IMG/VR virus record: IMGVR_UViG_3300020178_000002
Span: 62,001-126,000 of that record
Direction: 5' to 3' (one strand)
Length of the DNA stretch: 64,000 bases
The translations under genes were made by a program, and so were the position numbers. Of the stretch, positions 10,693 through 58,028 are shown piece by piece. Each line of letters begins with the position of its first letter. The stretch's first letter is position 1. The notes beneath the pieces are model-generated. The model had not been told where the DNA came from and did not search any database. It saw only the letters and a list, made by a program, of their open reading frames with translations.

Positions 10693-10725
10693 TAATTCAT
10701 TTATATTAAGCTTATAAAGAAACTA
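10693..10725. promoter_or_regulatory. Divergent overlapping pair of putative late-promoter motifs
   Basis: TAATTCATTTATA (+, 10693-10705) points to 10743; TAGTTTCTTTATA (-, 10713-10725) points to the tail tube gene. Confidence 0.6.
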
Positions 10726-10742
10726 TTAGAGGAGATACTGCT

Positions 10743-11435
10743 ATGGGTTATGGTTTGATTGCTGCAAAGAAGAAGAAAAAGAAAAGAAAAAAAGATCCCA
10801 AGTATGTTCATGACAAATACAAAGAGATATTAGACAATCAGAAAGAAAAGGATGAGGGCAAGGCTAAAGCAGTGGCTTGGTCTATTTACTGTAAGTATAA
10901 GAATCCTGAAAGCCCTAGATGTAGCAAGAAGCCCTCAGAATACCTAACCAAGAAAGCATATAGCTCTCCACAAGAAGAAAATATGTACAGAAAGAGAGCA
11001 CAGCTTGTAGGTTCGATTTTAGATCAATTCGTGAGCGAAGCACTTCTAAAGTCTTATGACATCATTGAACAAGAGTCCAATTCAAAGTATGTGGAAGAGC
11101 TAGCTCTTTATATGTGGACTAGAGGGCAAATACCTCATTCTTTGGTGAGCATTAGCTCTGAAGCTAAGACTCTAGGCTCTATCTCTAATGAGATACACAG
11201 AGAAAAAAAGCCTTCCAGACTACCTACGAGAGAAGAAAAGAGAGAAGTATACAAGATTCTCCGCAAGGTCTTCATCTCCATCTATAAGGATTCATCTGTT
11301 AAAGTTTGGGCGAAGCTCTACAATGTAATTGGAGACTTAAATCTTACAATCATTCAACTAGAGATATTATCTTATGATAACAAGGTCAACACACCTAGCC
11401 TTTATAGTGATTTACTTGGGATTATTCTTGGTTAA
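10743..11435 (+). CDS. Hypothetical protein, basic N-terminal domain
   Basis: GGAG RBS; Lys-rich N-terminus, AKAVAWSIYC motif, internal TKKA junction. Confidence 0.7.
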   Translation: MGYGLIAAKKKKKKRKKDPKYVHDKYKEILDNQKEKDEGKAKAVAWSIYCKYKNPESPRCSKKPSEYLTKKAYSSPQEENMYRKRAQLVGSILDQFVSEALLKSYDIIEQESNSKYVEELALYMWTRGQIPHSLVSISSEAKTLGSISNEIHREKKPSRLPTREEKREVYKILRKVFISIYKDSSVKVWAKLYNVIGDLNLTIIQLEILSYDNKVNTPSLYSDLLGIILG

Positions 11436-11483
11436 GGTTCAATAATTTTATAACAAAGGTATTCTATAAATAAAGGAGTACCT

Positions 11484-13088
11484 ATGTTAGATGATGAACG
11501 AATAAAGAAAACAGTTGAGAAGCTTAGGCAGATTCGGGCTAAAGAAGATTTAAAGCCCCCACCTTGCTCAATACTCAACACACACCTGCCTAATGGAGCT
11601 GAACTAAAACTAAGACAGTATCAGATTCAAGGTATTTTACACCTTCTGGCAATGCCGAGATTTGTTCTAGGGGATGATACAGGTTTGGGAAAAACCCTAC
11701 AAACAATCGCTGCTTTGTCTTATGTCTGGGATAAGAATCCAAACATAGCTGCTGTTATATGCACCACTAAGTCAGCAGTGGGGCAATGGGAGAGTGAATT
11801 TGATAAGTTCACCAATGGTGTGACAGTATTCAAGTGTTTGGGTACAAAGAAAAAGAGAGAGAAGATTCACAAAGAGTATCAACTTTTTGAAGGTCCAAAA
11901 GCTCTGATCATGGGGTACAGAACAGCAGTAATGGACTTTCAACACCTACAACATATGGTAGGTCATGTAATGGTATTTGATGAAGCCACAAACTTTAAAA
12001 ATGACAGAGCACAAGTACATCAAGTATGTAAACACTTGGCTGGTTCAGCAGAGAAAGTTTGGTCTTTATCTGCGACAATCATTAAAAATAGACTCATGGA
12101 AGCATGGGCTATTTATCAAGTAACTGTACCTGGATTGTTTTCAAATAAGACTCACTTTATGAGAGAGTATTGCATCACTAGAGAACAAAGCATAAAAGGC
12201 TCTAGGAGAAAGATACAGATTGTTGTTGGACACAGGAAGCGTGATATAGAAGCCTTTAGAGAGGTGATAGACCCTTTCTTTATTGGTCGCCCTAAGCATG
12301 AGGTTGCTAAAGAACTTCCTTTGCTTACAACTAAGATTTTAGAATGTGAGCTGAACAAGACCCAGAAAGCCAAGTATAAAGAAGCATTAGAAGGTATTCT
12401 TGAGACTATTGATGCTGAGACAGGTGAGGTTGTAGAAAAAGAAGTATCTAAGCTCACAGCAGTCACAATCTGTCAGCAGATAGTGAATCACCCAGCATTG
12501 ATAGATTGTGATGGAGATTCTAGCAAACTTGAGAGTCTTCTAGATCTTTTAACAAACGAGTTAGAGGGCGAGAAGATTATTATCTTTAGTAGGCTTCGTA
12601 AAATGGTAGACATTATGGAAGCTGAAATTGAGGCTAAGGGTATCAAGACTTGTCGTATCACAGGAGCTGAAAATGGAGACCAGAGACTTGCTAGTCAAAA
12701 GGCTTTCCAAGACCCAGAGAATGAAACTAAGGTTTGTTTGATTACAATGGCTGCTGCTGAAGGTGTGAACTTACAGCTAGCTAAAGCTGTTGTTTTTTAT
12801 GACACTCCTTGGTCTGCTGGAGACTATCTACAGATCATAGGTCGAATGATTCGCATTGGGTCTATACATGACAAGGTTTTCAGTTACCATGTTTGTGCTA
12901 AGAAGACTATTGATGAGAGGGTTATGAAGACCCTTAAAGCTAAGATGGGCTTGATAGAAGCTGTCTTAGGTAAGCGTTTGAAAGAAGAAGGTGAGTCTGA
13001 CGAGGTATTAGAGGTTGGTCAATCAGAGTTATCAGACATTTTTGATGGCCTTCTTGAAGATGCGAATGAGATCATAAAGGTGAAGTAA
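11484..13088 (+). CDS. SNF2-family (SF2) helicase/ATPase
   Basis: GDDTGLGKT, DEAT, LSAT, EGVNLQ, PWS..Q..GRMIRIG motifs; AAGGAG RBS. Confidence 0.92.
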   Translation: MLDDERIKKTVEKLRQIRAKEDLKPPPCSILNTHLPNGAELKLRQYQIQGILHLLAMPRFVLGDDTGLGKTLQTIAALSYVWDKNPNIAAVICTTKSAVGQWESEFDKFTNGVTVFKCLGTKKKREKIHKEYQLFEGPKALIMGYRTAVMDFQHLQHMVGHVMVFDEATNFKNDRAQVHQVCKHLAGSAEKVWSLSATIIKNRLMEAWAIYQVTVPGLFSNKTHFMREYCITREQSIKGSRRKIQIVVGHRKRDIEAFREVIDPFFIGRPKHEVAKELPLLTTKILECELNKTQKAKYKEALEGILETIDAETGEVVEKEVSKLTAVTICQQIVNHPALIDCDGDSSKLESLLDLLTNELEGEKIIIFSRLRKMVDIMEAEIEAKGIKTCRITGAENGDQRLASQKAFQDPENETKVCLITMAAAEGVNLQLAKAVVFYDTPWSAGDYLQIIGRMIRIGSIHDKVFSYHVCAKKTIDERVMKTLKAKMGLIEAVLGKRLKEEGESDEVLEVGQSELSDIFDGLLEDANEIIKVK

Positions 13089-13888
13089 TGGAAAACCAGA
13101 TTTTTAATGAGTCCTGTTTGGACACCATGAGCCGAATGGAAGACAACTCCATAGACTTAGTGGTTACTAGCCCTCCCTACGACAATCTTAGAAGCTACGA
13201 TAATGACGTAGATCAAACTTGGGGAGAGTCCGTTTGGAAGCCGATTATCTCAGAGTTGAGTAGAGTTCTAGCAGAAGGTGGGGTTATCGTTTGGGTTGTG
13301 GGAGATGCTACAATTGATGGTTCAGAGACAGGAAGCTCATTTAAACAAGCTCTCTATTTCATGGAGTGTGGACTTAACCTTTATGACACAATGATTTGGG
13401 AGAAAACAGGAACACCATTTCCTTCACAGGTGAGATACAATGGGATCTTTGAATATATGTTTGTTTTTTCTAAAGGCAAACCAAACACTTTCAACCCCTT
13501 AAAGAAGCCCAATAAGACAGCAGGCCAATACCGGAAGAATAGGACTTTCCGACAAAAAGACGGTGGGTTCTCGGAGGGTAAAGAGCTATCGGTTTCGGAA
13601 GAAAGTAATAGGAATAACATATGGGTCATTAAGAATGGCTTTAACAGGTCATCTAAAGATAAATATGCTTTTGACCATCCTGCCATATTCCCAGAAAACC
13701 TAGCTCACGATCATATTATCTCTTGGTCTAACGAGGGAGACTTAATTTACGACCCATTCTTAGGTTCAGGTACTACAGCTAAGATGTGCAAGATCACTAA
13801 GAGAAAATACATTGGATCAGAGATTAGTGAAGATTATTTCAAGATCGCACTTAAGAGGATCGAAGAAGCACAGGAGTATTTCTTTTAA
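13088..13888 (+). CDS. DNA N4-cytosine/N6-adenine methyltransferase, beta class
   Basis: TSPPY, HPAIFP, DPFLGSGTT, IGSEI. Confidence 0.93.
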   Translation: MENQIFNESCLDTMSRMEDNSIDLVVTSPPYDNLRSYDNDVDQTWGESVWKPIISELSRVLAEGGVIVWVVGDATIDGSETGSSFKQALYFMECGLNLYDTMIWEKTGTPFPSQVRYNGIFEYMFVFSKGKPNTFNPLKKPNKTAGQYRKNRTFRQKDGGFSEGKELSVSEESNRNNIWVIKNGFNRSSKDKYAFDHPAIFPENLAHDHIISWSNEGDLIYDPFLGSGTTAKMCKITKRKYIGSEISEDYFKIALKRIEEAQEYFF

Positions 13889-14691
13889 TGGAAAACCAGA
13901 TTTTTAATGAGTCCTGTTTGGACACCATGGGCAGAATGGAAGACAACTCCATAGACTTAGTGGTTACTAGCCCTCCCTACGATAATCTTAGAACCTATGA
14001 TAATGATGTAGATCAAACTTGGGGGGAATCCGTTTGGAAGCCGATTATCAAAGAGCTGGCTAGGGTTATCAAAGATGGAGGGGTTATCGTTTGGATTGTG
14101 AACGATGCAACAGTAGATGGTTCAGAGACAGGTTCTAGTTTCAAACAAGCCATTTATTTCATGGAGTGTGGGCTTAACCTTACGGACACTATGATTTGGG
14201 ATAAAGGGTCAAATGGTGCTGTAGGGAATAATAAGATTTATTGGCAGTCTTTTGAATATATGTTCGTCTTTTCTAAGGGTTCTCCTGCGACAATTAACTT
14301 AATAAAAGACAGGAAAAATAAGAGGGTAGAGAAGAAGAACAAGGGTACAAAAAGAATGAAAGATGGAGAGCTTATTCCCATCACAAAAGGGTCATACGGA
14401 GATTTCGGTAGGAGAACCAACATTTGGTCATACTTAACAGGCAGAGGACATTCAACTTTAGATGTGTATGCCTTTGAACACCCTGCTACATTTCCCGAAA
14501 ACCTAGCTCACGATCATATTGTTTCTTGGTCTAATGAGGGAGATGTGGTTTACGATCCATTCTTGGGTTCGGGCACTACAGCTAAAATGTCTAAGATGAC
14601 CAAGAGAAAATATATAGGGTCTGAGATTAGTGAAGATTATTTCAAGATCGCACTTAAGAGAATCGAAGAATCACAGGAATACCTATTTTGA
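13888..14691 (+). CDS. DNA N4-cytosine/N6-adenine methyltransferase, beta class (tandem paralogue)
   Basis: TSPPY, HPATFP, DPFLGSGTT; flanking domains near-identical to 13088-13888. Confidence 0.93.
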   Translation: MENQIFNESCLDTMGRMEDNSIDLVVTSPPYDNLRTYDNDVDQTWGESVWKPIIKELARVIKDGGVIVWIVNDATVDGSETGSSFKQAIYFMECGLNLTDTMIWDKGSNGAVGNNKIYWQSFEYMFVFSKGSPATINLIKDRKNKRVEKKNKGTKRMKDGELIPITKGSYGDFGRRTNIWSYLTGRGHSTLDVYAFEHPATFPENLAHDHIVSWSNEGDVVYDPFLGSGTTAKMSKMTKRKYIGSEISEDYFKIALKRIEESQEYLF

Positions 14692-14694
14692 TGC

Positions 14695-14763
14695 AAAAAA
14701 AAAGGTCTAGCTTTCGAGGGGCATTTGGTGAAAACAACACCAGCCCCCCTTTTGCTAGACCTT
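14695..14763 (-). terminator. Long GC-rich hairpin with U-tract (intrinsic terminator)
   Basis: Minus strand AGGTCTAGC..AGGGGGC.TGGTG-loop-CACCA..GCCCCT..GCTAGACCT followed by a T run. Confidence 0.7.
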
Positions 14764-14838
14764 ACTAAAGAAGAATACTTAGTCCTATTTAAAAGACCAG
14801 ATTCCTAGTAAAGAATGGGATTACATTCAGAAAAGACT

Positions 14839-15153
14839 TTAATCTGGGTCAATCATTTGAACCTTACGATTAAAGCCTGGTACATGGAACTTACACCATT
14901 CCCATGCTTCGAGTTCTTTAGCTACACCCTCTTTTCCTTCGAGACAGTTACGAAGGAAGTTGAGTCGGACACCAAGATCACCATGATTCTTTAAAAAAGT
15001 AAGGTTATCTATTTCTTCTAGTGTAGCTTTCTCAACAGCTTCTTTTAGAACCTTGAGTTCATCCTTATTGACAAGGAAAATAACTTGGTTATTTACACCG
15101 AACACATCGTTTAAAAGTTTTAATGCTTCTTTATTCATACTTACTCTTTCCAA
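14839..15153 (-). CDS. Hypothetical protein
   Basis: ORF in a tight minus-strand cluster; true start may be the second Met. Confidence 0.6.
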   Translation of the reverse strand: MERVSMNKEALKLLNDVFGVNNQVIFLVNKDELKVLKEAVEKATLEEIDNLTFLKNHGDLGVRLNFLRNCLEGKEGVAKELEAWEWCKFHVPGFNRKVQMIDPD

Positions 15154-15347
15154 GGTGGTAAGAAATCAAAGTTTGAGTTTCCTTGTTCAAGGGCAATTCT
15201 TTCTTGTCTGCGACACTCTGGATAATCTGGTCGCCTTTGTTCATTTTCTCTGCACTTAGGGCAGATTTTTTGTTGATTATACCATGAAGTATAAGAAACA
15301 TTCCCTAACTCTTGGTCACATCTGTCACATACTCTAAAACTTGGCAA
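15141..15347 (-). CDS. Small zinc-finger protein
   Basis: CDRC...CPKC. Confidence 0.65.
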   Translation of the reverse strand: MPSFRVCDRCDQELGNVSYTSWYNQQKICPKCRENEQRRPDYPECRRQERIALEQGNSNFDFLPPWKE

Positions 15348-15630
15348 GGTACTGTCCTTCCTGTGCGATACAAGTTAAGTGGTCAAGAGCCTCAACAGTA
15401 AAGCCTGTTTTGATAGCTGCTTGATTCTCTAGGTCTTGGATAATAACTTGAAGCTCAGAGTTCTTCATACCATTAGCTGGCAGATAACTGTTATTTCCAC
15501 CTCGACCCTTATTTGAAACATGAATAAAAGGTTTATTCTTGTGAAGCAAAACAGCTTCCCATGCAACTCCTTTAGGAGTTTCTCTCATTTTTAGGTCTGT
15601 TAGTTTTAAGTCTTTTAGCTTTACCTTCAT
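15334..15630 (-). CDS. Hypothetical protein
   Basis: ORF with GGAG RBS in operon. Confidence 0.65.
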   Translation of the reverse strand: MKVKLKDLKLTDLKMRETPKGVAWEAVLLHKNKPFIHVSNKGRGGNNSYLPANGMKNSELQVIIQDLENQAAIKTGFTVEALDHLTCIAQEGQYLAKF

Positions 15631-15636
15631 AGGACT

Positions 15637-15948
15637 TTACTCCTTTAGATCTGTGTAAAACTTTAGACAGTTTCCAGACAGTCCACCTGGGAGAGTATCT
15701 CCAACTTTAACTCCTTGCCAAGGTGACATATCGTTGTTGAGGTAAATAACTTTCCACCTCGCCCGATAACCATCGCTGTTTTGTTCGTTCAAGATTTTAC
15801 CTGTGCTTTGTACATGTACGATAAGAGTTTCTCCAGAGAAACATTTCATCTCTGCTGAAGCACCATATTGTCGGTAGGAGTCAAACTCCGCATCTGTACA
15901 ACCTACACCTGCAAGTACCGCTAACCCAATAATAATTTTCTTAATCAT
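15637..15948 (-). CDS. Putative lipoprotein
   Basis: MIKKIIIGLAVLAGVG-C lipobox-like signal. Confidence 0.65.
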   Translation of the reverse strand: MIKKIIIGLAVLAGVGCTDAEFDSYRQYGASAEMKCFSGETLIVHVQSTGKILNEQNSDGYRARWKVIYLNNDMSPWQGVKVGDTLPGGLSGNCLKFYTDLKE

Positions 15949-16582: not shown

Positions 16583-16595
16583 TAATCTATTTATA
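16583..16595 (+). promoter_or_regulatory. Putative late promoter motif
   Basis: TAATCTATTTATA, 34 nt upstream of 16630. Confidence 0.6.
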
Positions 16596-26430: not shown

Positions 26431-26499
26431 AGTGGGAATCCTTTGTTTTTATATCTCTATAGGATAAAGGTATATAACAATTACAATACGAGGCGAGAA

Positions 26500-26910: not shown

Positions 26911-27975
26911 CTACCAGACTTGGAAGTGAACTCCTAAAGACCAAGTGTTAGTTCCATCAGATCCTGCTACCCAACCGAGACCAGGTGCTAGGTTTAGGTT
27001 CTTACCTAGCAAATAAGGATGCCATGTTGCTTTTGCCCCCAAGAAAACATTTGAGGGAGTGATAACACCATTAGCACCTATTCTGTATTGGCCTTTCTGG
27101 AAGTTAAGTAAACTTGCTCCGATGGAAAGCCCAAATTCATTCGCTTGATAAGTACTGCCTACCAAAAGACTAGGTTCAAAAAGTTTTAACAAAGTAGAGT
27201 TCTGAGCATCTTTTTTAGGTACATATATGAGCTTACTGTCAAGGTTAGGGTCGCCTTTTATGAGCTTGCTTTCAAGACCTGGTATTGGAACAAAATTGCC
27301 TTCTTGAACATAGCCACCTAATACATGAATCCCTTGATTCTGAACAGCACCAGAACCCAATCTTGATTGATCTTCACCATATGTGATGGCTACAACTTTA
27401 AAGGCTAAGTTAAGGTCAATGCTTCCAAGACCTTTCCATAGATTCAGAGAAGAGAATCTAGCTAGTGGTTTGCCATTTACTTGATAAGGAGACTCCCATT
27501 CAAAAGTGAATGGGGTACATTTATCTGGGTGGTCAGAGCATCTAGTTATATCTAGTCCGTCTACACCTTTCCAAGACGGGGGTGGTGCTGTTTTTTCTTT
27601 TACAGTCCTACCTATTTTCCCAATCCCTTTTTTAATCCTACCCTCCATACCTAAAACTCTTTGAGAGATACTATCTACCCTAGCACCTGTTTCTTTTGTG
27701 TATTTGTAAATAGCATCTTGTGTTCTTTGGTCTAGATTCGAAATAATCTTTGAAGATTGTTCTTCTAGCTCTTTCCTTGAAACCATTTGAGATTTAACAA
27801 CATTAATCTCATCTCTGGTCTCTGACAAGATTCTAGCAGTCTTACTTAACTCTCCATTCATTTGTTTCTGAATAGTGTTGTCTAACTGACTTATCTTATA
27901 GGTCATCCATGCATTGTTAGCAAGAGAGAGTGTGAGCAGACCTGAAGCTATATATGCTGCTATTTTAATATCCAT
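26911..27975 (-). CDS. Envelope protein: N-terminal TM, coiled coil, C-terminal beta-strand region (spanin-like candidate)
   Basis: IAAYIASGLLTLSLA anchor; ends WSLGVHFQVW; AAAGGA RBS at ATG 27975. Confidence 0.55.
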   Translation of the reverse strand: MDIKIAAYIASGLLTLSLANNAWMTYKISQLDNTIQKQMNGELSKTARILSETRDEINVVKSQMVSRKELEEQSSKIISNLDQRTQDAIYKYTKETGARVDSISQRVLGMEGRIKKGIGKIGRTVKEKTAPPPSWKGVDGLDITRCSDHPDKCTPFTFEWESPYQVNGKPLARFSSLNLWKGLGSIDLNLAFKVVAITYGEDQSRLGSGAVQNQGIHVLGGYVQEGNFVPIPGLESKLIKGDPNLDSKLIYVPKKDAQNSTLLKLFEPSLLVGSTYQANEFGLSIGASLLNFQKGQYRIGANGVITPSNVFLGAKATWHPYLLGKNLNLAPGLGWVAGSDGTNTWSLGVHFQVW

Positions 27976-27981
27976 TTTATT
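27969..27981 (+). promoter_or_regulatory. Putative late promoter motif
   Basis: TATCCATTTTATT, 38 nt upstream of 28020. Confidence 0.45.
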
Positions 27982-31053: not shown

Positions 31054-31118
31054 CACTCTTTGCTTGCCTCTTATCTTATAATAGAAAGTAACTATTAAGA
31101 TTTGAGACAAGGAGAGAT

Positions 31119-39377: not shown

Positions 39378-39453
39378 TTATTGTCCTTAAAAAGTGTGTG
39401 CTTTAATCCCTAATCTTATAAGATAGGAAACTTAACAAGGAGATAAATTAAAC

Positions 39454-42957: not shown

Positions 42958-42997
42958 AACAGAACTCCTTCTTCAATCGAGTGTCATATAAAGAGTA

Positions 42998-45037
42998 TTA
43001 AGCGATTACAATGTAATTGACTTTAATACTTATTGAGCCATTACTGTAGTTTGCAATCCCTAAAACACTAGAATGGCCAGCAGCATCACTATACCTCAGT
43101 TGCAGGTAGCGTTTTGTCGCATACACAAAGGAAGCCCCAACATAAAGATAAGGACTCCCATCTATCTCCATAAAAGAGCTGGTGGAAGTCACAAAAGATA
43201 AGACTTTAACATTATCATATAGCAGATTCCCACTTGAGTCTATGGGGCTGTAAAGACCTGTGTAATCTTCTGTAGTCTCTGGATAGAAAAGGGTGTTTTC
43301 ATTATTATTTAGATGACCCATACGAATGTCTGTAGATCCTCCAGAATTATAAGTCACATCTTGAAAGAATAAAGGAATCACATCAACATGGTAGTTCAGA
43401 TTGATGTCAAAAGAAACAGACCCAGAACCTAAGATACTTATACCTAAAGCTCTCAATACATTATTAGCACCTAGAGCCATTAATTTGTTTGGTGCATCCG
43501 AGACAATAGCACTTGAAGATACTGTGACATTAGTACCAGCATCAATCTCCACACCAAGACCTGAAAGTGATACAGTATCTGTGGCTGTAGTAGTTATATT
43601 CTCTGCCGTAGTTTCAATCGAACCACTAACAGCAGAGAATTCAATCAAACCACTAGCAGCAGTAGTGGTCACACTTGGTGCTGTAATATTTATTTCATCA
43701 TCTCCAGTAACATCTACTGTGCGACCATCAATAGCAACAGAACCTCTCTTTTCTAAAATACTGTTGCCACTAACAGCACCACCTCGAATGGTCACAGAAC
43801 CTCCAAAGATACCACCATTGCCATTATTTAAACCTAAGAAGCTACCACCCTCAATCAATACATCTCCTGCATATGCAAAGTCACTATCCAAAAGAGAGAA
43901 ATCAAAGTCTTCAACAGCACCACCTCGAATAAAAACCTTTCCTTTAGTTGCTGCATCTTTAGAGGTAGGTTCATCAGCAGTACCAGCTCCGATAACAACA
44001 TCTCCAGGTGTGCCACTTAGATTTGAATCGCCACTGTAGATATGAATGTCACCACCACTTGAATCTGTAAATCCTGAAGCACCCTCTATGGTTAAACCAC
44101 CTGCTGTGCCACCAGAATAGTTATCGCCTACTTTTATATCTATATCTCCACCAATACCTTGATCTGTTTTACCTGTACCTATATTTATAGAGCCAGCAGT
44201 TCCACTATTTGAATTGCTAGTTTTGATAGAAAGGTCACCACTACTAGAAGAACCGTATAGTGAGCCTGTGAAACTACCTGTACTGATAGAAATACCACCT
44301 GTAAATTCACTAGGGTCTGTTCGATCTGAAGTGTGTAAATTAACACCAGACGCTCTACCTTTTATATCTACATAGTAGGCATCCATTGTAAGATTCCCAT
44401 AACCATAGGCTATTAAGTTAATGTAGCCACCCCAAGTTTCTGAATCTTGCAAACCATTGTTTGCTTTACCACCTAAAATATTAACATCTCCAGCTCTATT
44501 AAAGTAAGATCCATCGAGAGCCATATTGCCCCCTCTTACATCAATACGGCCTGGATCATCTCCTGTATTGTCACTTTGACCATAGATTAAGACATTTGCA
44601 TTCAAGCTTGTGTATGTAGGCTTAGGTACAGGGGAGATTAAAATATCATCTCCAGACCTAAGCTCTAGTCTTTCTTCACTTTGGACATATATGTGACCTC
44701 TTTCAGAGAGGGTAAGAGGAGTAGCATACTCTCCACTTTTAATAAGTATTCGACCAGAGCTAACTCCTGTACCAGAAATCAACTCTATTTTCCCACCGAC
44801 ACCGCCTGTTTTTGACTCTCCTGCATGCAATAGGATTTCACCCCCAGCACCATCAAAAGAGTCTCCAGATTCTAGGGTAATAATGCCACCATCTCCAAAA
44901 CCAGAGGCAGAGTTTATAAGTATACCTCTTTCAGAGCTTCCGAAAAGAGAAGCACTATCTATTGAGGGTTTAATAATTCGACCTCTTTGTTGAGACTGGT
45001 TGATTGAAACTTCTAAGGAATCTTTAGTTGAACTCAT
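42998..45037 (-). CDS. Gly/Ser-rich repeat protein, putative fibre/spike structural protein
   Basis: Many GG-x-I-x-[IL]-x-[GS]G repeats, then a globular C-terminus; late motif upstream. Confidence 0.55.
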   Translation of the reverse strand: MSSTKDSLEVSINQSQQRGRIIKPSIDSASLFGSSERGILINSASGFGDGGIITLESGDSFDGAGGEILLHAGESKTGGVGGKIELISGTGVSSGRILIKSGEYATPLTLSERGHIYVQSEERLELRSGDDILISPVPKPTYTSLNANVLIYGQSDNTGDDPGRIDVRGGNMALDGSYFNRAGDVNILGGKANNGLQDSETWGGYINLIAYGYGNLTMDAYYVDIKGRASGVNLHTSDRTDPSEFTGGISISTGSFTGSLYGSSSSGDLSIKTSNSNSGTAGSINIGTGKTDQGIGGDIDIKVGDNYSGGTAGGLTIEGASGFTDSSGGDIHIYSGDSNLSGTPGDVVIGAGTADEPTSKDAATKGKVFIRGGAVEDFDFSLLDSDFAYAGDVLIEGGSFLGLNNGNGGIFGGSVTIRGGAVSGNSILEKRGSVAIDGRTVDVTGDDEINITAPSVTTTAASGLIEFSAVSGSIETTAENITTTATDTVSLSGLGVEIDAGTNVTVSSSAIVSDAPNKLMALGANNVLRALGISILGSGSVSFDINLNYHVDVIPLFFQDVTYNSGGSTDIRMGHLNNNENTLFYPETTEDYTGLYSPIDSSGNLLYDNVKVLSFVTSTSSFMEIDGSPYLYVGASFVYATKRYLQLRYSDAAGHSSVLGIANYSNGSISIKVNYIVIA

Positions 45038-45065: not shown

Positions 45066-45078
45066 AATAAAAGACATA
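45066..45078 (-). promoter_or_regulatory. Putative late promoter motif
   Basis: TATGTCTTTTATT, 28 nt upstream of 45037. Confidence 0.55.
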
Positions 45079-48841: not shown

Positions 48842-48854
48842 TATAAAAGATTTA
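48842..48854 (-). promoter_or_regulatory. Putative late promoter motif
   Basis: TAAATCTTTTATA, 29 nt upstream of 48812. Confidence 0.55.
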
Positions 48855-51554: not shown

Positions 51555-51557
51555 ATC

Positions 51558-52464: not shown

Positions 52465-52477
52465 TATAAATAGACTA
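52465..52477 (-). promoter_or_regulatory. Putative late promoter motif
   Basis: TAGTCTATTTATA, 32 nt upstream of 52432. Confidence 0.6.
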
Positions 52478-52480
52478 TGA

Positions 52481-52873
52481 CTAATCTTCTTTTTTGGGTT
52501 CTTCTGGCTTAGGTGTTTCTTCTAATGTAAGAGTGCTTTTAATCTTTTGCTTGAAGGCTTTAACAATATATGCATTTAAAACACCTGCACAAGCACCCAT
52601 CCATATATCTACCATTTGGAGTGGGTCAGATAGAGTGTATGCCACAAAAGCACCTGTTAAAACTGCAAAGGACCTTATAAAAGAGTCTGCCATACCATTG
52701 CAAAACTTCCACAAAAAAGGCTTCACAATTTGAGTGACTGCAAAGCTGATGATAGCTGCAATGAGAACAAGATAAAGATGACCCATATGAGGTTCTAAGG
52801 AGTTAGGTTCATTTGGGTTTACTTCTTTTGCTGTATGTATCTGGTGACCAGGTACAAAATGTTTATTGCTCAT
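52481..52873 (-). CDS. Holin-like three-TM membrane protein
   Basis: Three hydrophobic helices, VTQIVK motif, charged C-tail. Confidence 0.5.
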   Translation of the reverse strand: MSNKHFVPGHQIHTAKEVNPNEPNSLEPHMGHLYLVLIAAIISFAVTQIVKPFLWKFCNGMADSFIRSFAVLTGAFVAYTLSDPLQMVDIWMGACAGVLNAYIVKAFKQKIKSTLTLEETPKPEEPKKED

Positions 52874-53754
52874 ACAAGACCCCCATCTAAATGTACTTTT
52901 GGTTTACCATATTCATCTACAAGATTCTTTGTGTAGAGAGCATATAATTGAAAAGCAAATGCAGGGACTAAGATAGCATTCCAACCTATACTTAATGACT
53001 TAAGAATCCAGCCAGATGGAACAGAAGGGAATAGAATGCCGAAGACAAGACCTAAACCAGACTCTGGTAAGCTATCTATCAAATCTACCCAATCAATCAT
53101 CCCTAAAAGCCCTGTCAATATGTCAGTTATCTTCCAACTTATCTCTGAAACATTGATCCAGATAAACCAGAAAATATATGCTTTAGCAGGCCAAGTAATT
53201 AGCTTTAACAAAGGATGTTTTTTTGCAAAGTTATCAAGCCACTCCCCTATATTACGAGACTTACCTGTAATAGGTTTAACAAAAGAAGCCACCCACTTCC
53301 CAAGCTTTCCTGTATATCCACCATACTTGTTGATAATAGACTGAACTATCGAGGTGAACGTAGGGGCATCAGATGCATATAAGAACAAGAAGTGTATTAG
53401 CTTACTCTTTTTCTTTAGCTTATTAGCTGTAGCTCTCCACCAATCTTTGCCCCTATCAAGCAAAACTTGAAACTTTTTGGAGAGTTGCCAATACATATCA
53501 ATACCAGCAGTGATTCCCAACTTGTCTTTGAAAATCTGCCACAGGTTAGGGGCTTTTTGAAAGCCTTGATAGATCTCTTTAAGTTTCTTAACAAGAAGAC
53601 CTTTTTTGGTGTGACTGCCAAATCTTAAAATACCCTCTCCAAAGACGCTCAAAGACCTAACATCTAACTCTCTTGTCACAAGGCTTGATGTTTTACAATA
53701 TGAAGAAGACTTGATAGCCAGATAAGAGGCAGCTAGAGCTATTTCTTTACTCAT
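52870..53754 (-). CDS. Membrane protein, basic/amphipathic with C-terminal TM helices
   Basis: Hydrophobic C-terminal third; KSS/KTS in the N-terminus. Confidence 0.65.
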   Translation of the reverse strand: MSKEIALAASYLAIKSSSYCKTSSLVTRELDVRSLSVFGEGILRFGSHTKKGLLVKKLKEIYQGFQKAPNLWQIFKDKLGITAGIDMYWQLSKKFQVLLDRGKDWWRATANKLKKKSKLIHFLFLYASDAPTFTSIVQSIINKYGGYTGKLGKWVASFVKPITGKSRNIGEWLDNFAKKHPLLKLITWPAKAYIFWFIWINVSEISWKITDILTGLLGMIDWVDLIDSLPESGLGLVFGILFPSVPSGWILKSLSIGWNAILVPAFAFQLYALYTKNLVDEYGKPKVHLDGGLV

Positions 53755-53766
53755 TACAGATAATCC

Positions 53767-54270
53767 TTAAGGTCTTTTTAAGATAGCAATACAGTCACCA
53801 GAGGAAGGGTGGTTTTTAGCGAGGGAACTCCACACTCTTTTAGCATCTACACTAGTGCTCCCACCCTCATCATTACATTCCTGTGGAATGAAGATAAAAG
53901 GATTACTACCATTTCTATCCCATTGGAGTTTTGCATACATGAGATACATCTTAGTGCCATACCCTTGACCCTTAAGCTCTTGCTCTATCCTACTTCTATC
54001 GACTTCAACAATACGAATTCCTTTAGAGCTTTTCATTTGAGGGTACTTGTTTACAAGAACCATTATGTCGTCATAGCAAGCAAACCTTGTGATGTCAGGG
54101 TATATGTTATGATACCCTTCAACAATCCCTAAACGATTGCCATCACCAGACATGAGACTAACAGAAGCCAACTCTCCAAATGGAGGGTCTTTTTGATACT
54201 GCTTCATAAATGTTAGTTTTTGTTTAGCCATGTGCTTCATTGCAATTCTCTTTATAAGTTGTTTTTTCAT
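53767..54270 (-). CDS. GNAT-like acetyltransferase
   Basis: IEQELKGQGYGTKMY motif A; start ATG 54270 after AGGGGG. Confidence 0.7.
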   Translation of the reverse strand: MKKQLIKRIAMKHMAKQKLTFMKQYQKDPPFGELASVSLMSGDGNRLGIVEGYHNIYPDITRFACYDDIMVLVNKYPQMKSSKGIRIVEVDRSRIEQELKGQGYGTKMYLMYAKLQWDRNGSNPFIFIPQECNDEGGSTSVDAKRVWSSLAKNHPSSGDCIAILKRP

Positions 54271-54297
54271 ACAGCCCCCTATATGAAAAGGGTCTTC

Positions 54298-54310
54298 GAT
54301 AAACAAAATA
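54298..54310 (-). promoter_or_regulatory. Putative late promoter motif
   Basis: TATTTTGTTTATC, 27 nt upstream of 54270, directly after a terminator. Confidence 0.45.
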
Positions 54311-54347
54311 AAAAAAGCCCTGCTCTCATTAAGAGAAACAGGGCTTT
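54307..54347 (-). terminator. Intrinsic terminator
   Basis: AAAGCCCTGTTTCTC-loop-GAGAGCAGGGCTTTTTTT on the minus strand. Confidence 0.85.
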
Positions 54348-54416
54348 AAGAGACAGCTACTTCTACCCAATAGCAGAAGCACATCAGAAGCTCCTCAGAG
54401 TAAATGCATTCCCACA

Positions 54417-54605
54417 TTACTCTTCGTTCTTGCGAGCCTCCAGAACATCTTTTCGTACTTCCTTACAAGAAGCAATGACCTCTTGCATAGCCTTACGAAC
54501 TCTTGTTCCAGCAGACTTGTTTCCATTGTCTGTCTTTTGTGCATCCTCATTAAGGGCTGCTAGGGTACTTTGTAGTTGTGCAATCTTTGTTGTAATGTCA
54601 CTCAT
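54417..54605 (-). CDS. Histone H1-like (Hc1-family) nucleoid protein
   Basis: GNKSAGTRVRKAMQ matches the Hc1-family GNKAAxxRVR core; AGGAGG RBS. Confidence 0.75.
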   Translation of the reverse strand: MSDITTKIAQLQSTLAALNEDAQKTDNGNKSAGTRVRKAMQEVIASCKEVRKDVLEARKNEE

Positions 54606-54654
54606 TGTGAACCTCCTAATTTATGGTTTATATTTGATTATACCGATTGTGTAC

Positions 54655-55008
54655 TCAATCTTTATAGAAAAAGATCTCATGTCCCTCTAAAAATTTGAAC
54701 GTTTCTTTTTTAGTCTTGGAACTGTATTCTTTTACCAACAAAGGATTAATTTGTGACACCCAAAGTAGCAAGTCAGGTTTATGAGGTAGCTTAGTCCAAC
54801 CGATATAGATTAAACCATCTTCATCAAGCCAAACTCTCTCATGCCCTAAAGCTTTTCGATTAGTAAAAAGTATAACCAAGCCATTCTTCTCTACCCAAGC
54901 TTTAGACTTCTCTAAAGTTTCGGGGTCTTTATCATAGAACCCTCGTATATAAGAAGAGGGTAGTATGCAAGAAGGCTTGACTCTACGCTTATACTTTATT
55001 GGCTTCAT
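54655..55008 (-). CDS. Hypothetical protein
   Basis: TAATG-coupled to 55008-55976. Confidence 0.55.
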   Translation of the reverse strand: MKPIKYKRRVKPSCILPSSYIRGFYDKDPETLEKSKAWVEKNGLVILFTNRKALGHERVWLDEDGLIYIGWTKLPHKPDLLLWVSQINPLLVKEYSSKTKKETFKFLEGHEIFFYKD

Positions 55009-55976
55009 TAATCTTTTTGAAAGGTTCTAGGGTTTACCTTAGAAAGTTCCTTCAAATCACCCATAGCATCCTCTACAAATACATTCTTATCTGGGATAAA
55101 GTCATCAAGGTCTTGGTTATCAACAAACATGTCTGTTGTTCCAGAGAGTACTTTCTTAAACCTAGCCCAAGCTTTCCCTCTCTTAAGGAATGCTTCTTTT
55201 GGATTGTAGTAGAAAAGTCCAATGACCCCAAGTGTCAAACCATATTTAAAGAGGAAGGTAGCTAAAGATGGGAAAACCATTCCTATCATGAAAGTCTTTA
55301 CAGCAGCAGATATAAAAGGACCTAAGCCTTTTGACTCACTGCCCCAATATTTTTTTGCAATAAGAGCATCTTTAACAGGGTTAATAGTATTCAAAGCTGC
55401 ATTAGCTACTTCAGAAATAGTTCTTGTACCGATATCTCTTCTTGCAACAGAAATAGCTCTAGCTTTTAACTCTGAAGAAGGCTGACCCTCATATCCCATT
55501 AAGTATTCTTCATAGAAAGGAGCTGTCTGGTAGAAAGAGCCAGAAACTTGAGTTGTGAGCTTTGCAAACTTTTTATTCTTAACTTTCCATGCAAGATAAG
55601 AAAGCAACTGTTCCTCATCTCTTTTAGGTTTTTCATTCTTCCTATCTAAAGCACCTCTTCTCCAAGAGTCATACATACCCTCAAGGAGTCTTTCAAAAGC
55701 AATCGCTCTAAAGAACTTAGTTAGGTGTGAAATGATAGGTGTGTATATGAATATAAACTTTGTAATCTTATGGAGAATGTTAGCAAAGAAAGTCCTAACA
55801 CCGACAATCTTAGCCACACCTGAGTCTATAAGATTTGTTATAAAGTTTTTAGCTTCCTTTATAGTAGTTGCTTCTTTGAACTGATAGTTAGCAATCCTAT
55901 AAAGGGTTCTTTTATCTTCCGAAGCAAACCTTAGATTTGCCTTGAAAACACTAGGGTCATCTAGAAAATTAATCAT
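55008..55976 (-). CDS. Membrane protein, tandem paralogue A
   Basis: MINFL..RFAS..RIANYQFKEA; PFYEEYLMGYEG; RDIGTRT. Confidence 0.75.
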   Translation of the reverse strand: MINFLDDPSVFKANLRFASEDKRTLYRIANYQFKEATTIKEAKNFITNLIDSGVAKIVGVRTFFANILHKITKFIFIYTPIISHLTKFFRAIAFERLLEGMYDSWRRGALDRKNEKPKRDEEQLLSYLAWKVKNKKFAKLTTQVSGSFYQTAPFYEEYLMGYEGQPSSELKARAISVARRDIGTRTISEVANAALNTINPVKDALIAKKYWGSESKGLGPFISAAVKTFMIGMVFPSLATFLFKYGLTLGVIGLFYYNPKEAFLKRGKAWARFKKVLSGTTDMFVDNQDLDDFIPDKNVFVEDAMGDLKELSKVNPRTFQKD

Positions 55977-57033
55977 TATCTAGTTCCTTTCTTATATCCT
56001 CTAGCTCTTCCTCAGATGGATTTACAAGCTGACCTAAAGAGTTCGAAACAAACACATCTTTCCTCAAGACTTTTTTGCCTAGAACTTCTTCAAAGTTGGA
56101 CTCAAAGTATTTCTTATCTTTGAAAAGTTTAGAGAAATGTCTAACCACATAGCCTTTTTGGAAGAAAGCTTCTGAGCCACTGTAATAGAAAAACCCTAAA
56201 ATACCAAGAGGGATCATTCCTTTTAAAAGAAGCATTCCATAGCCCATCTCAACCACAACAATCCAGAGTATTGATTGAGGGAGAATTCTCCTTATAACAT
56301 CGTTTGTATAATTACTTTTAGTTATTTTAACTTGTTGTCCTGTTCCTCTTTGCAGCTTTTTGCCTGTATATGCCTCATTGTCTACCATATCTCGCATAAG
56401 CTGGAACATAGTATTAAAGATATTCAAAGAGTCAAAGGCAGCTTTAGCTACCTCAGAAACAGTTCTTGTACCAATATCTCTGTCTGTAACCATCTTAGCT
56501 CTAGCAGCAAGACTGTTCTCATCTTTACCCTCATAGCCCATTAAGTATTCTTCATAGAAAGGATCTGCCATATAGAAAGTGCCTTGAGATTTAACATAGG
56601 CACTTCGGAAGTGCCTGCCATTGAACATCTTGCTCTTTTTTATTCGATTGCTTAGATAAACACTCACAGCCTTTGCTGTTCTTTTTTTGTTGTTTATTTT
56701 GTCTTTAACACCCAACAGCCATGAATCATACATTGCACTTAAAAGTCTCTTATAAGCTACCTTTCTAAAGAAATTAGTAAGGTGCGAGATGACAGGTGTA
56801 GATAAAAAGAACTTTTTGGTCACAGCATGGATTGCATTGACTGTCTTCTGATAAAGGTTTTTAACCCAGATCACACCTGAAGATATAGCATTAGTTAGCC
56901 AGTTAGAGACCTTAGGCATTGAGTTTGCTTGTCTTAACTGATAGTTTGCAATCTTATATAAAGAAGACCTGTCAACAGAAGCAAGCTTGACTTGAGCAGA
57001 GAATTGCTCTGGAGAAGCAAGGAAATTAATCAT
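55969..57033 (-). CDS. Membrane protein, tandem paralogue B
   Basis: MINFL..KLAS..KIANYQLRQA; PFYEEYLMGYEG; RDIGTRT. Confidence 0.75.
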   Translation of the reverse strand: MINFLASPEQFSAQVKLASVDRSSLYKIANYQLRQANSMPKVSNWLTNAISSGVIWVKNLYQKTVNAIHAVTKKFFLSTPVISHLTNFFRKVAYKRLLSAMYDSWLLGVKDKINNKKRTAKAVSVYLSNRIKKSKMFNGRHFRSAYVKSQGTFYMADPFYEEYLMGYEGKDENSLAARAKMVTDRDIGTRTVSEVAKAAFDSLNIFNTMFQLMRDMVDNEAYTGKKLQRGTGQQVKITKSNYTNDVIRRILPQSILWIVVVEMGYGMLLLKGMIPLGILGFFYYSGSEAFFQKGYVVRHFSKLFKDKKYFESNFEEVLGKKVLRKDVFVSNSLGQLVNPSEEELEDIRKELDND

Positions 57034-57074
57034 ATCTTTACCCTTTGAGTGTGTTATGTTGATAACATAAGGCT

Positions 57075-57087
57075 TATAAATGAATTA
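57075..57087 (-). promoter_or_regulatory. Putative late promoter motif
   Basis: TAATTCATTTATA, 41 nt upstream of 57033; identical to 10693. Confidence 0.6.
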
Positions 57088-57627
57088 TTAGCCACCCATC
57101 TTAAACTTCCCACCAACAGCAACAGTTTTAGATACTGCCCAAGGGTCTTGGACTACAGGCTTTACCTCTTCTAAGTGACCCCCTAAGTTAAAGGATTGTG
57201 CAGGTGTGTTGAAGCTACTGTCTGCTTTTCTAGGCACTGCTTCCTGAACCTCTGGGGGCTGACAATCTTGTACTTCTATGGTAGGTTTAACCTCTATTAT
57301 AGTAGGCTTAACTTCTATCTTTGGTTCTTCTATATGAACCAAAGGTTGAGAACTAGACCCCCAAGTTTCACTCTGTTGCTCTTGGAAAACTTCTAAGTCT
57401 GCAATGCCTTCCCACCTAGAAGACTCTGATTGCTTGACTATATTTGGATTGTCTAGCAACCTATCTACCTGAGTTAGTATTCTCTTATCCCAAGAAGAAT
57501 AACCCCAACTCGCACGAACACACTCTCTATTCTTGCATTGAGAGCAAAAAATCTCTTCAAACTGTTGAGGGCTTAACTTAGAAGCCCCGTCATTGCATTC
57601 TATATAAAAATCTTTGCTTGGTTTCAT
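57088..57627 (-). CDS. Hypothetical protein, N-terminal Cys cluster and low-complexity tail
   Basis: C..FCSQCKNRECVR; motif TAGGCTCTTTATG at 57662-57674 upstream. Confidence 0.65.
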   Translation of the reverse strand: MKPSKDFYIECNDGASKLSPQQFEEIFCSQCKNRECVRASWGYSSWDKRILTQVDRLLDNPNIVKQSESSRWEGIADLEVFQEQQSETWGSSSQPLVHIEEPKIEVKPTIIEVKPTIEVQDCQPPEVQEAVPRKADSSFNTPAQSFNLGGHLEEVKPVVQDPWAVSKTVAVGGKFKMGG

Positions 57628-57671
57628 CTGGATCTCTCTTTCAAGTTATATCTCAGAATACCATAAAGAGC

Positions 57672-58028
57672 CTATAACGTAAAAGTAAGGTGTAAAAGAG
57701 AGCCTTTCTTTTTGTATGATAAAGTGTAGCCTTTTGGTGCAACGACACGCAAACCTTTTGCTTCCTGCTTTAAGAACACCTCTCCTACAAAAGAGCTTGA
57801 GCCAGAGCTAGTAAAACAGTCTTTAATCAGTAGTGTGTTTCCTTGCTTTTCATAAGTGACCCACTCTATAGGCTCATTGAAAGAGAGTATGATTGATATA
57901 GTCTTATCAGCAGAGACACGAACTGCCTCTGGGATAGTATATAAATAATTCTCATCAATACACCCAACCTCGGCTAAACTAACAGATAGAGGGAGAATTG
58001 TAAGTATGCAACATAGTAAATACTTCAT
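57672..58028 (-). CDS. Exported protein with signal peptide
   Basis: MKYLLCCILTILPLSVSLA-E. Confidence 0.6.
   Translation of the reverse strand: MKYLLCCILTILPLSVSLAEVGCIDENYLYTIPEAVRVSADKTISIILSFNEPIEWVTYEKQGNTLLIKDCFTSSGSSSFVGEVFLKQEAKGLRVVAPKGYTLSYKKKGSLLHLTFTL

What the first reader, a model, noticed from the sequence alone, without database searches (positions are those of the whole stretch)
10693..57674. Oriented promoter-like motif TA-N5-TTTAT upstream of 15 genes defines a putative late regulon
Seen on the sense strand 27-48 nt before starts at 10693(+), 10713(-), 16583(+), 18503(+), 21303(-), 22463(+), 27969(+), 29495(+), 45066(-), 46970(-), 48842(-), 52465(-), 54298(-), 57075(-) and 57662(-). 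One-base-longer variants occur near 26463(-) and 42987(-). TAATCTATTTATA and TAATTCATTTATA each occur twice exactly. I found no exact copy at this distance before polA, dnaC/dnaB, recD2, SNF2 or the sigma-like gene. Some copies contain the reverse complement of the T4 late promoter TATAAATA, but orientation in co-directional gene pairs shows TTTAT is the sense reading. Caveats: the motif is AT-rich, and in three cases the TA[AG] is the upstream stop codon.
Basis: partly seen in the sequence, partly recalled or inferred. Interest (0 to 1): 0.75.

Follow-up and report, generated by a model that had tools for sequence, protein, structure and literature searches.

The report
Conserved late-gene promoter motif of a huge phage
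A short oriented DNA word, (A)ATAG-N4-TTTAT(A), sits about 30-50 bases ahead of many genes of an uncultured 312-kb marine phage and its relatives, including the tail-tube, tail-sheath and major-head operons, and is most likely the promoter of the phage's late genes; it is a solid but fairly ordinary kind of finding, and what reads the motif is still unknown.

Summary
All 15 sites exist. TA-N5-TTTAT lies in sense orientation 28-49 nt before 15 of 64 starts, against about 1.2 expected from dinucleotide shuffles. It never occurs at convergent junctions or inside tight operons.

The true element is longer, (T)TAATAG-N4-TTTAT(A). An unseeded motif search on four related contigs with independent gene calls recovers it.

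It is conserved while its flanks diverge: before tail-tube orthologs (15/19 relatives), before the major-head operon of this phage's own contig and 12/14 relatives, and before the sheath operon (10/12 relatives). Orthologs of SNF2 (0/9) and DnaB (0/6) lack it. In related phages, replication-gene orthologs carry a TATAAT-like element instead, TC(N)TATAA(G/T).

So "oriented promoter of a late regulon" is supported, with three corrections:
- RecD2 also has a copy, 32 nt before its RBS-supported start.
- A nuclease and a topoisomerase-IB-like gene are also members.
- The "sigma-like" gene is a Myb/HTH regulator.

No transcript-start data could be obtained. No T4 gp55, T7-like or multisubunit phage RNA polymerase was found, so the reading factor is unknown. 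I rate it a new member of a known kind, of moderate interest.

The parts
10693..10704 (+). class A motif before 10743-11435 (230 aa, unknown); faces the tube-gene copy
   Evidence: 16.9 bits; an opposed copy is also present in relatives L016 and L017
10714..10725 (-). class A motif before the tail-tube gene 9798-10664(-), which heads the tail module
   Evidence: 20.3 bits; conserved before 15/19 orthologs
9798..10664 (-). tail tube protein gene (288 aa)
   Evidence: fold matches to contractile-tail and Hcp tubes (model pLDDT only 54.6); Atlas features point to Phi812_tail_tube; the ortholog in Tunturi_5 is a virion structural protein lying between sheath and head genes
16583..16594 (+). class A motif before 16630-18114 (494 aa, unknown)
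   Evidence: 20.5 bits
18503..18514 (+). class A motif before 18556-19041 (161 aa)
   Evidence: 21.0 bits
21304..21315 (-). class A motif before 19492-21270 (592 aa, unknown)
   Evidence: 17.0 bits
22463..22474 (+). class A motif before 22514-23851 (topoisomerase-IB-like); its TAG is the stop codon of 22142-22465
27969..27980 (+). class A motif before 28020-28868 (282 aa)
   Evidence: 14.5 bits
29495..29506 (+). class A motif before 29547-30425 (292 aa); starts one base after the upstream stop
   Evidence: (17.8 bits)
   Evidence: (13.3 bits)
45067..45078 (-). class A motif before 42998-45037 (679 aa)
   Evidence: conserved at 29 nt before the ortholog in L098
45083..45094 (+). variant (TAGTTAATCTAT, within GATAGTTAATCTAT) before the pentapeptide-repeat gene 45130-46464
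   Evidence: 5.6 bits, listed; the same word is conserved before the ortholog in L098
46971..46982 (-). class A motif before 46461-46928
   Evidence: 17.4 bits; the ortholog in L098 keeps a copy at 40 nt
48843..48854 (-). class A motif before 46983-48812 (609 aa)
   Evidence: orthologs in L094, L097 and L098 keep it at 29-34 nt
52466..52477 (-). class A motif before 52061-52432 (staphylococcal-nuclease homologue)
54299..54310 (-). class A motif before 53767-54270; preceded by a hairpin plus T-run
57076..57087 (-). class A motif before 55969-57033 (354 aa)
   Evidence: 20.1 bits
57663..57674 (-). class A motif before 57088-57627; its TAG is the stop codon of 57672-58028
26464..26476 (-). N6 variant before 25009-26430 (ChaC/AAT protein)
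   Evidence: the ortholog in L094 has an exact N5 copy at 45 nt
42988..43000 (-). N6 variant before 41983-42957
   Evidence: the ortholog in L098 has an exact N5 copy at 30 nt
31073..31082 (+). contrast, class B element ATCTTATAAT before polA
39413..39424 (.). contrast, class B palindrome ATCTTATAAGAT shared by the divergent pair 38877-39377(-) and 39454-40155(+), the latter leading the DnaB operon
   Evidence: TC(N)TATAA(G/T) is conserved before orthologs
58650..58658 (-). contrast, class B element TTCTATAAG before the Myb/HTH regulator 58025-58618

Best explanation
The motif is the core promoter of the late (virion-gene-centred) transcription class of an uncultured 312-kb myovirus-type huge phage and its lower-GC relatives.

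The functional element is a single oriented block of about 16-17 bp, (T)TAATAG-N4-TTTAT(A), with no -35 partner. It sits directly after the stop codon of the preceding gene and 28-49 nt before the next start. The exception is the head operon, where a conserved structured leader puts it more than 100 nt upstream.

Shown:
- placement and strand specificity;
- conservation of position before the tube, head and sheath operons across relatives;
- its absence before SNF2 and DnaB orthologs, which carry a separate TATAAT-like element.

Inferred:
- TTTATA acts as a -10-type element and ATAG as an upstream extension near -20..-17. Before the head operon, the motif is followed by 4-5 variable bases and conservation then resumes, which looks like a discriminator followed by the transcript start.
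- Each late gene or short operon is started separately.
For: Enrichment and strand bias: 15 sense against about 1.2 expected, 5 antisense. The upstream TA is informative. Weight-matrix hits are confined to promoter positions.

Anatomy: 0 of 32 tight same-strand junctions and 0 of 8 convergent junctions carry the motif. Every same-strand gap of 24 nt or more carries the motif, a variant of it, or a TATAA(G/T)-containing element. The 78-nt divergent region 10665-10742 holds little besides two opposed copies, yet it must contain two promoters.

Independent replicate: an unseeded EM search on 57 upstream regions of four related contigs with JGI/Logan gene calls gives TTTAATAGT(C/T)TTTTTATA in about 61% of them, mostly ending 25-46 nt before starts.

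Footprinting:
- tube orthologs 15/19; genes internal to the tail operon 0-1 of 17-19; SNF2 0/9; DnaB 0/6;
- this phage's own head locus L163 has a copy heading the 207-aa gene plus major-head operon, conserved in 12/14 relatives at 104-115 nt;
- sheath operon in 10/12 relatives at 30-43 nt;
- orthologs of 42998, 46461 and 46983 keep it at 29-40 nt, and the four orthologs of the non-motif gene 48969 all lack it.

Other points: the tube identification rests. Two-box sigma-70 matches are depleted and never coincide with the sites.
Against: There is no transcript-start or timing evidence. The only RNA run holding the phage gave nine contigs of 130-385 nt laid on the stretch, at depth 2-5, scattered over tube, SNF2 and methylase genes.

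No reading factor was found: no gp55, no T7-like RNAP, no D[FY]DGD multisubunit RNAP, and no sigma family among the proteins scanned. About 250 kb of this phage's contig was not examined.

Members include RecD2, a nuclease and a topoisomerase-like gene. In relatives the motif precedes about 60% of intergenic starts, so it may be the general non-early promoter and not strictly late.

The unseeded search inside the window merges it with the TATAAG-type elements, so the class boundary is not sharp. Most motif-headed genes in the window have no known function and no ortholog in the distant relative LR745208.1.
Confidence: 0.65

Rival explanations
1. These are ordinary host housekeeping-sigma promoters. 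TATA(A/T)N is a degenerate -10 box, the T-run and ATAG are an AT-rich upstream or extended region, and there is no separate late class.
For: The unseeded search in the window merges the sites with CTTATAAG/TCTATAAG elements into one Y-rich+TATAAG model. Four sites read TATAAG. Canonical TGGTATAAT-type boxes occur in the same genomes, so host sigma-70-type recognition is probably used by this clade.
Against: The invariant bases are TTTAT and the upstream TA(G/A), not the A-11/T-7 of TAnnnT. No -35 is conserved, and two-box matches are depleted and never coincide with the sites. Across relatives the two element types stay with different gene sets: tube, head and sheath against SNF2 and DnaB. The word persists across phages of 36-48% GC from different habitats.
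Confidence: 0.15
2. The motif is an operator for a phage DNA-binding regulator, for example the Myb/HTH protein 58025-58618. That protein would activate or repress adjacent weak promoters, and the motif would not be the RNA-polymerase recognition element itself.
For: There are two short blocks about one helical turn apart. A multi-HTH regulator (phrog_323) is encoded in the window behind a TATAAG-type element.
Against: No other conserved promoter element accompanies the motif in gaps as short as 44-54 nt. The strict single orientation and the narrow distance to the start fit a core promoter better. The motif is not a dyad.
Confidence: 0.1
3. The motif works at the RNA level: a U-rich processing site, an RNase E or Hfq-type site, or a translational operator in polycistronic transcripts.
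For: It is U-rich and lies in short intercistronic gaps of same-strand gene blocks, often touching the upstream stop codon.
Against: It is also present, correctly oriented, in divergent intergenic regions where transcription must start. Its distance to the start codon varies from 28 to more than 100 nt. Before the head operon, sequence conservation begins at the motif and the bases just upstream are unconserved.
Confidence: 0.05
4. It is a chance by-product of AT-rich intergenic DNA.
For: The motif is AT-rich and the loose pattern occurs 24 times elsewhere in the window.
Against: Dinucleotide-matched shuffles of the same upstream windows give 1.17 against 15 observed. There is strand bias, positional conservation across dozens of diverged genomes, and recovery by unseeded search on independent contigs.
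Confidence: 0.01

Closest known systems
T4-type late promoters (TATAAATA at -10, read by host RNAP core with gp55, gp33 and the gp45 clamp)
   Same: A single AT-rich element of about 8-16 bp with no -35 box. It precedes virion-gene operons of a large myovirus, while replication genes use a different, TATAAT-like promoter type.
   Different: The word is different, and where the 8-mer occurs it is in the opposite orientation: sense TATAAATA in 1 upstream window against 4 antisense. There is an extra upstream ATAG block. No gp55 homolog was detected in the window, the complete 485-kb relative or any locus.
Extended -10 / '-16 region' promoters of bacterial primary sigma factors (TGnTATAAT; TRTG at -18..-15 in Firmicutes, from my own knowledge)
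   Same: No -35 is required. An upstream extension of a -10-type hexamer lies at a similar distance, and the inferred gap to the transcript start has discriminator length.
   Different: The hexamer TTTATA lacks the A-11/T-7 signature, and the extension is ATAG, not TG. Canonical TGGTATAAT occurs elsewhere in the same clade as a separate element.
Promoters of jumbo phages that encode their own multisubunit RNAPs (phiKZ late TATG at +1; AR9 late AACA-N6-TA/G; AT-rich, roughly 10-nt early motifs centred at -10; PMC7598289)
   Same: Phage-specific, single-block, AT-rich motifs found bioinformatically upstream of operons in genomes above 200 kb.
   Different: In those phages the easily found motif marks early genes; here it marks tail and head genes. 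No D[FY]DGD RNAP subunit is present in the window or in the complete relative.
T7-like single-subunit RNAP promoters (TAATACGACTCACTATAG)
   Same: An oriented block of about 17 bp that starts TAATA and ends TATA(G/A).
   Different: No T7-like RNAP was detectable. Four to five variable bases separate TATA from the conserved leader, whereas T7 starts directly after TATA.

Membership tests
T4-type late promoter system | TATAAATA on the non-template (sense) strand at about -10 | tested here: not met
   Sense TATAAATA occurs in 1 upstream window and antisense in 4. The conserved sense word is TTTAT(A).
T4-type late promoter system | no -35 element; one compact block only | tested here: met
   Unseeded searches find a single block. 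Two-box scans never coincide with the sites.
T4-type late promoter system | a phage-encoded gp55-family sigma | tested here: inconclusive
   phmmer with T4 gp55 found nothing at E<=10 in the window, the complete LR745208.1 or any fetched locus. This was a single-sequence search, and about 250 kb of this phage's own contig was not examined.
T4-type late promoter system | precedes virion structural genes and not replication genes | tested here: met
   Tube, head and sheath operons carry it. SNF2 orthologs 0/9 and DnaB orthologs 0/6. Exception: the RecD2 copy.
Sigma-70 two-box housekeeping promoter | TTGACA, 16-18 nt spacer, TATAAT | tested here: not met
   None of the 63 two-box matches lies at a motif site in the position of that gene's promoter. 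Matches are depleted: 27 against 49.1 +/- 7.2, and 36 against 49.8 +/- 6.1.
Sigma-70 two-box housekeeping promoter | -10 hexamer with conserved A at position 2 and T at position 6 | tested here: not met
   The invariant core is T-T-T-A-T. The bases after it are weakly conserved: A 13/22, then mixed.
phiKZ/AR9-type jumbo-phage RNAP promoters | phage-encoded split beta/beta' subunits with the DFDGD catalytic motif | tested here: not met
   No D[FY]DGD in six-frame translations of the window, the complete 485-kb relative or the loci fetched up to that call, L001-L092.
phiKZ/AR9-type jumbo-phage RNAP promoters | late consensus TATG(+1) or AACA-N6-TA/G | tested here: not met
   The consensus here is (T)TAATAG-N4-TTTAT(A). 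Reference motifs are from PMC7598289.
T7-like single-subunit RNAP promoter | phage-encoded T7-family RNAP | tested here: not met
   phmmer with T7 gp1 found no hit at E<=10 in 7,762 ORF fragments from the window, the relative and the loci fetched up to that call, L001-L092. Very divergent enzymes would be missed.
T7-like single-subunit RNAP promoter | conserved block abuts the start site (TATA then +1) | tested here: not met
   Before the head operon, 4-5 variable bases separate TTTATA from the conserved ACGC and leader. There are no direct start-site data.
Any promoter | primary transcript 5' ends just downstream | tested here: inconclusive
   The one metatranscriptome holding the phage gave only scattered low-depth contigs.

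The most novel reading that the evidence does not exclude
The motif is read by a phage-encoded specificity factor that is not detectably related to gp55, sigma-70, T7-like or phiKZ-like polymerases, and this factor co-evolves with its promoter word across a cosmopolitan family of 200-600 kb phages. The evidence is compatible with this. The same conserved tube gene is preceded by (A)ATAG-N4-TTTAT in relatives of 36-48% GC, and by other words (CCATTTTGCGCGGT, CCCTATCG, CCTATAC/G) in higher-GC relatives. That pattern hints at lineage-specific recognition and not a shared host sigma.
Probability: 0.3. Interest if true: 0.6.

Novelty: new member of a known kind. Interest (0 to 1): 0.4.

Why it matters
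This phage family is very widespread: 369 tube-gene and more than 500 head-gene relatives in IMG/VR, on contigs up to 619 kb. More than two thirds of the window's proteins have no recognisable family.

A validated late-promoter word gives a sequence-only way to split these genomes into transcription units and temporal classes, and to flag unknown genes as probably virion or late functions. It also gives a specific ligand with which to look for the unknown factor that redirects transcription. The only cultured relative, Tunturi_5, has had no transcription analysis (PMC11924767).

Tried and rejected
RNA evidence: both run searches and the single read-laying run were used. Run X20 gave nine short low-depth contigs spread over late-type and early-type genes, so there is no verdict on transcript starts.

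Distant relative LR745208.1 (485 kb, 55% GC): it shares 20/65 proteins but has only 5 copies of the motif and carries a different repeat. It is uninformative for this motif.

Reading factor:
- The Atlas hint that 46983-48812 resembles sigma region 2 was not supported. It has 7 close homologs, none with a Pfam label, and no Pfam or informative PHROG hit.
- The 'sigma-like' 58025-58618 is a Myb/HTH regulator.
- No T7-like RNAP, no D[FY]DGD, no gp55.
- The giant 3642-aa protein of the relative has no Pfam domain.

Function of motif-headed genes: Pfam and PHROG scans left most of the window's ORFs unannotated. PDB sequence searches of four large proteins and of the tube profile found nothing. An Atlas search of 16630-18114 gave nothing usable.

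Terminators: the scan was too noisy to show terminators before motif sites. Most gaps are too short to hold one.

Other: Rfam found no family in the window or in L163. A Bacteroidota-type TAnnTTTG reading was dismissed because the genes have strong Shine-Dalgarno sites and the spacing differs (sequence inspection).

Full report
**What the window is.** The 64-kb window (38% GC) is part of IMG/VR contig IMGVR_UViG_3300020178_000002, which is 312 kb long. The phage is found in salt-marsh, estuary and marine metagenomes. It has no close GenBank relative. Its PolA is 44% identical to that of the uncultured 485-kb phage LR745208.1. Its most conserved protein links it to one cultured phage, the 309-kb myovirus Tunturi_5 of an Acidobacteriota host (PMC11924767). 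I called 65 genes in many alternating strand blocks.

Pfam recognises the following:
- SNF2 helicase
- three N6/N4 DNA methylases
- a topoisomerase-IB-like protein
- a ChaC/AAT protein
- PolA
- ClpP
- RecD2
- DnaB
- a pentapeptide-repeat protein
- a staphylococcal-nuclease homologue
- a GIY-YIG-type protein
- a Myb/HTH regulator

Most other proteins match nothing in Pfam or PHROGs.

**The observation.** All 15 sites are present; '-' strand coordinates are one base low. The loose pattern occurs 39 times against 21.65 +/- 4.46 in shuffles, and the excess is entirely positional. Fifteen copies lie in sense orientation 28-49 nt before a start. Dinucleotide shuffles of the same AT-rich upstream windows give 1.17 +/- 1.06, maximum 7 in 2000. 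Antisense matches number 5, several of them in divergent intergenic regions. Given an upstream TTTAT, TA is found 7 bases before it in 15 of 22 cases, against 39 of 308 genome-wide, so the two half-sites are coupled. A weight matrix at 10 bits or more finds 19 sites, 15 at promoter position. The other 4 are no more than a Markov null predicts, about 7.

**Anatomy.** Same-strand neighbouring genes are bimodal. Thirty-two pairs are separated by 12 nt or less and never carry the motif. No pair has a gap of 13-23 nt. All fourteen pairs with gaps of 24 nt or more carry the motif, a one-base variant, or a TATAA(G/T)-containing element. None of the eight convergent junctions has the motif. The 78-nt divergent region between the tube gene and 10743 holds little besides two opposed copies whose TTTAT cores are 9 nt apart. 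Comparable core spacings of mostly 8-9 nt (up to 12) recur before the tube orthologs of relatives (my reading of the printed sequences). Since both genes need a promoter there, this is the strongest within-genome argument that the motif is the promoter.

**A second element.** An unseeded EM search on the window's intergenic upstream regions converges on a broader model, a pyrimidine-rich stretch ending in TATAAG. That group lies before polA, the divergent pair 38877/39454 (the latter leading the DnaB operon), 36232, 24325 and the HTH regulator. Six of 16 non-class-A genes have [CT]TATAA[GT], against 1.1 in shuffles. Comparative data separate the two groups. Orthologs of SNF2 and 39454 in related phages carry TC(N)TATAA(G/T), a TATAAT-like box, and never the class A word.

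**Comparative evidence that it is a conserved promoter.** The protein just downstream of the 10714-10725(-) copy has 369 relatives in IMG/VR. In relatives of 37-48% GC and 51-73% protein identity, the upstream region has diverged except for a block (A)ATAG-N4-TTTAT(A), which is present before 15 of 19 orthologs. Genes internal to the tail operon show it in 0-1 of 17-19 loci.

Four further related contigs were obtained through a different gene and came with JGI/Logan gene calls. They show 22 of 51 pattern hits at 17-51 nt sense-upstream of called starts. An unseeded search on their 57 intergenic upstream regions returns TTTAATAGT(C/T)TTTTTATA in about 61% of them. Orthologs of 42998, 46461 and 46983 keep the element at 29-40 nt. 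The orthologs of the two genes with one-base-longer variants have exact copies. The four orthologs of the non-motif gene 48969 lack it.

**Is it 'late'?** The 288-aa protein is a tail tube. An AlphaFold model (low confidence, pLDDT 54.6) matches contractile-tail, PVC, AFP and Hcp tubes and a jumbo-phage inner tube. Atlas features point to Phi812_tail_tube. Its Tunturi_5 ortholog is a virion structural protein lying between the sheath and the major head protein. It heads a module that ends in a baseplate-hub-like protein.

Using the annotated Tunturi_5 head and sheath proteins as bridges, I fetched this phage's own major-head locus, L163, from elsewhere on the same contig. The head gene is the second gene of a two-gene operon. 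A near-consensus copy, TTAATAGTTTGTTTATAG, stands in the gap before that operon, and another copy precedes the next gene. In 12 of 14 non-redundant low-GC relatives the motif sits at the same place, 104-115 nt before the operon.

The sheath gene of the window's own contig was not among the 80 loci returned. In 10 of 12 low-GC relatives, however, the two-gene sheath operon is headed by the motif at 30-43 nt. So all three textbook late modules carry it, while SNF2 and DnaB orthologs do not.

There are exceptions. RecD2 has a copy 32 nt before its RBS-supported start. A nuclease, a topoisomerase-IB-like gene and, through variants, the ChaC/AAT and pentapeptide-repeat genes are also members.

**Geometry and mechanism.** Before the head operon the sequence upstream of the motif is unconserved. 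The motif is conserved, 4-5 variable bases follow, and conservation then resumes with ACGC and a long leader that folds into hairpins. This is the pattern expected of a -10-type element, a discriminator and a transcript start. It argues against a T7-like arrangement in which transcription begins directly after TATA.

There is no conserved -35. Two-box sigma-70 matches are depleted in the window and never coincide with the sites. I therefore favour recognition by a bacterial-type RNA polymerase carrying a non-standard specificity factor. This step is inference.

Searches for a factor were negative:
- no D[FY]DGD polymerase signature in the window, the complete 485-kb relative or the loci held at that point;
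- no T7-like polymerase;
- no T4 gp55;
- a weak sigma hint for 46983-48812 was not borne out.

**Direct evidence.** One salt-marsh metatranscriptome holds the phage, but only as scattered low-depth contigs over late-type and early-type genes alike. No transcript boundaries can be read from it.

**Comparison and novelty.** In logic the system resembles T4: TATAAT-type promoters for replication genes and a compact late element with no -35. It fails the T4 membership tests on word, orientation and gp55. It differs from phiKZ/AR9-type jumbo phages, whose easily found motifs mark early genes and which encode their own polymerases. Neither the literature searches nor the paper on the only cultured relative turned up a promoter analysis for this clade. 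It is a new member of the known kind 'phage-specific late promoter', well supported by comparative evidence, with an open question about what reads it.

Noticed in passing
window 9732-9797 (between the tube gene and 9180-9731): A block conserved in at least 12 related phages: (T)GGTATAAT, then a short GC hairpin (GGGTAGCCGTACCC), then AAATAAACGGACAGGAT. The window's version is GTGGTACAATAGGGAAGCCGTTCCC. It looks like an extended -10 box plus a 5' hairpin, or an attenuator or processing site after the tube gene.
   Followed up: no
L163:5285-5400 (this phage's head-operon leader) and the same place in relatives: A conserved leader of about 100 nt lies between the motif and the head operon. The tested part, L163:5285-5360, which spans the first hairpin (GGGGTTGG...CCACC), folds at z = -2.8. 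A second stem-loop just downstream appears to covary across the family: CTCTCTTGAAAACAGAGAG, CCCCTGTAAACAGGGAG and CCCCGAACAGGGAG from 39 to 66% GC. There is no Rfam match.
   Followed up: partly
window 10693-10725 and orthologous regions in L016, L017, L019, L023, L036: The two class A copies of the divergent pair face each other, with mostly 8-9 nt (up to 12) between the TTTAT and ATAAA cores, in the window and in relatives. The two polymerases could probably not occupy both at once, which suggests competition between the two promoters.
   Followed up: no
window 53894-53905 (-): A strong class A copy (16.0 bits, GTAGTAATCCTTTTATC) lies inside gene 53767-54270, 139 nt before the next start. 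It could be an internal promoter or a mis-called gene boundary.
   Followed up: no
LR745208.1 (L004-L013), for example record positions 13225, 15320, 197322, 464721: The 55%-GC relative lacks the motif but carries its own intergenic repeat of about 50 nt: CCCTATCGGTATG...TTTTTAG.GAAATCGAC.
   Followed up: partly
upstream of tube orthologs in L039, L040, L044, L054, L057, L060, L063: Higher-GC relatives carry CCATTTTGCGCGGT before the tube gene. Others carry CCTATAC/G or CCCTATCG. The promoter word seems to change with subclade.
   Followed up: no
window 9000-28900 and 44500-64000: Two-box sigma-70-like matches are depleted relative to shuffles: 36 against 49.8 +/- 6.1, and 27 against 49.1 +/- 7.2.
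   Followed up: no
window 58025-58618 (-): The gene read as sigma-like is a three-HTH Myb-type regulator (phrog_323; only a fragment of Sigma70_r4 matches). It sits behind a TATAAG-type element, so it is a candidate early or middle regulator.
   Followed up: partly
L101-L180 (major head protein loci): The 291-aa major head protein is unusually conserved, with 87-94% identity in the best segment, across contigs from 39 to 66% GC and up to 619 kb. It always directly follows a conserved gene of about 200 aa.
   Followed up: no
window 13088-14691 and 33712-34503: Three N6/N4 DNA methyltransferase genes, two of them tandem paralogs that start with the same ATGGAAAAC.
   Followed up: no
window 62185-63999 (-), open at the window's end: This is part of a very large protein. 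Its relative in LR745208.1 is 3642 aa with no Pfam domain.
   Followed up: partly
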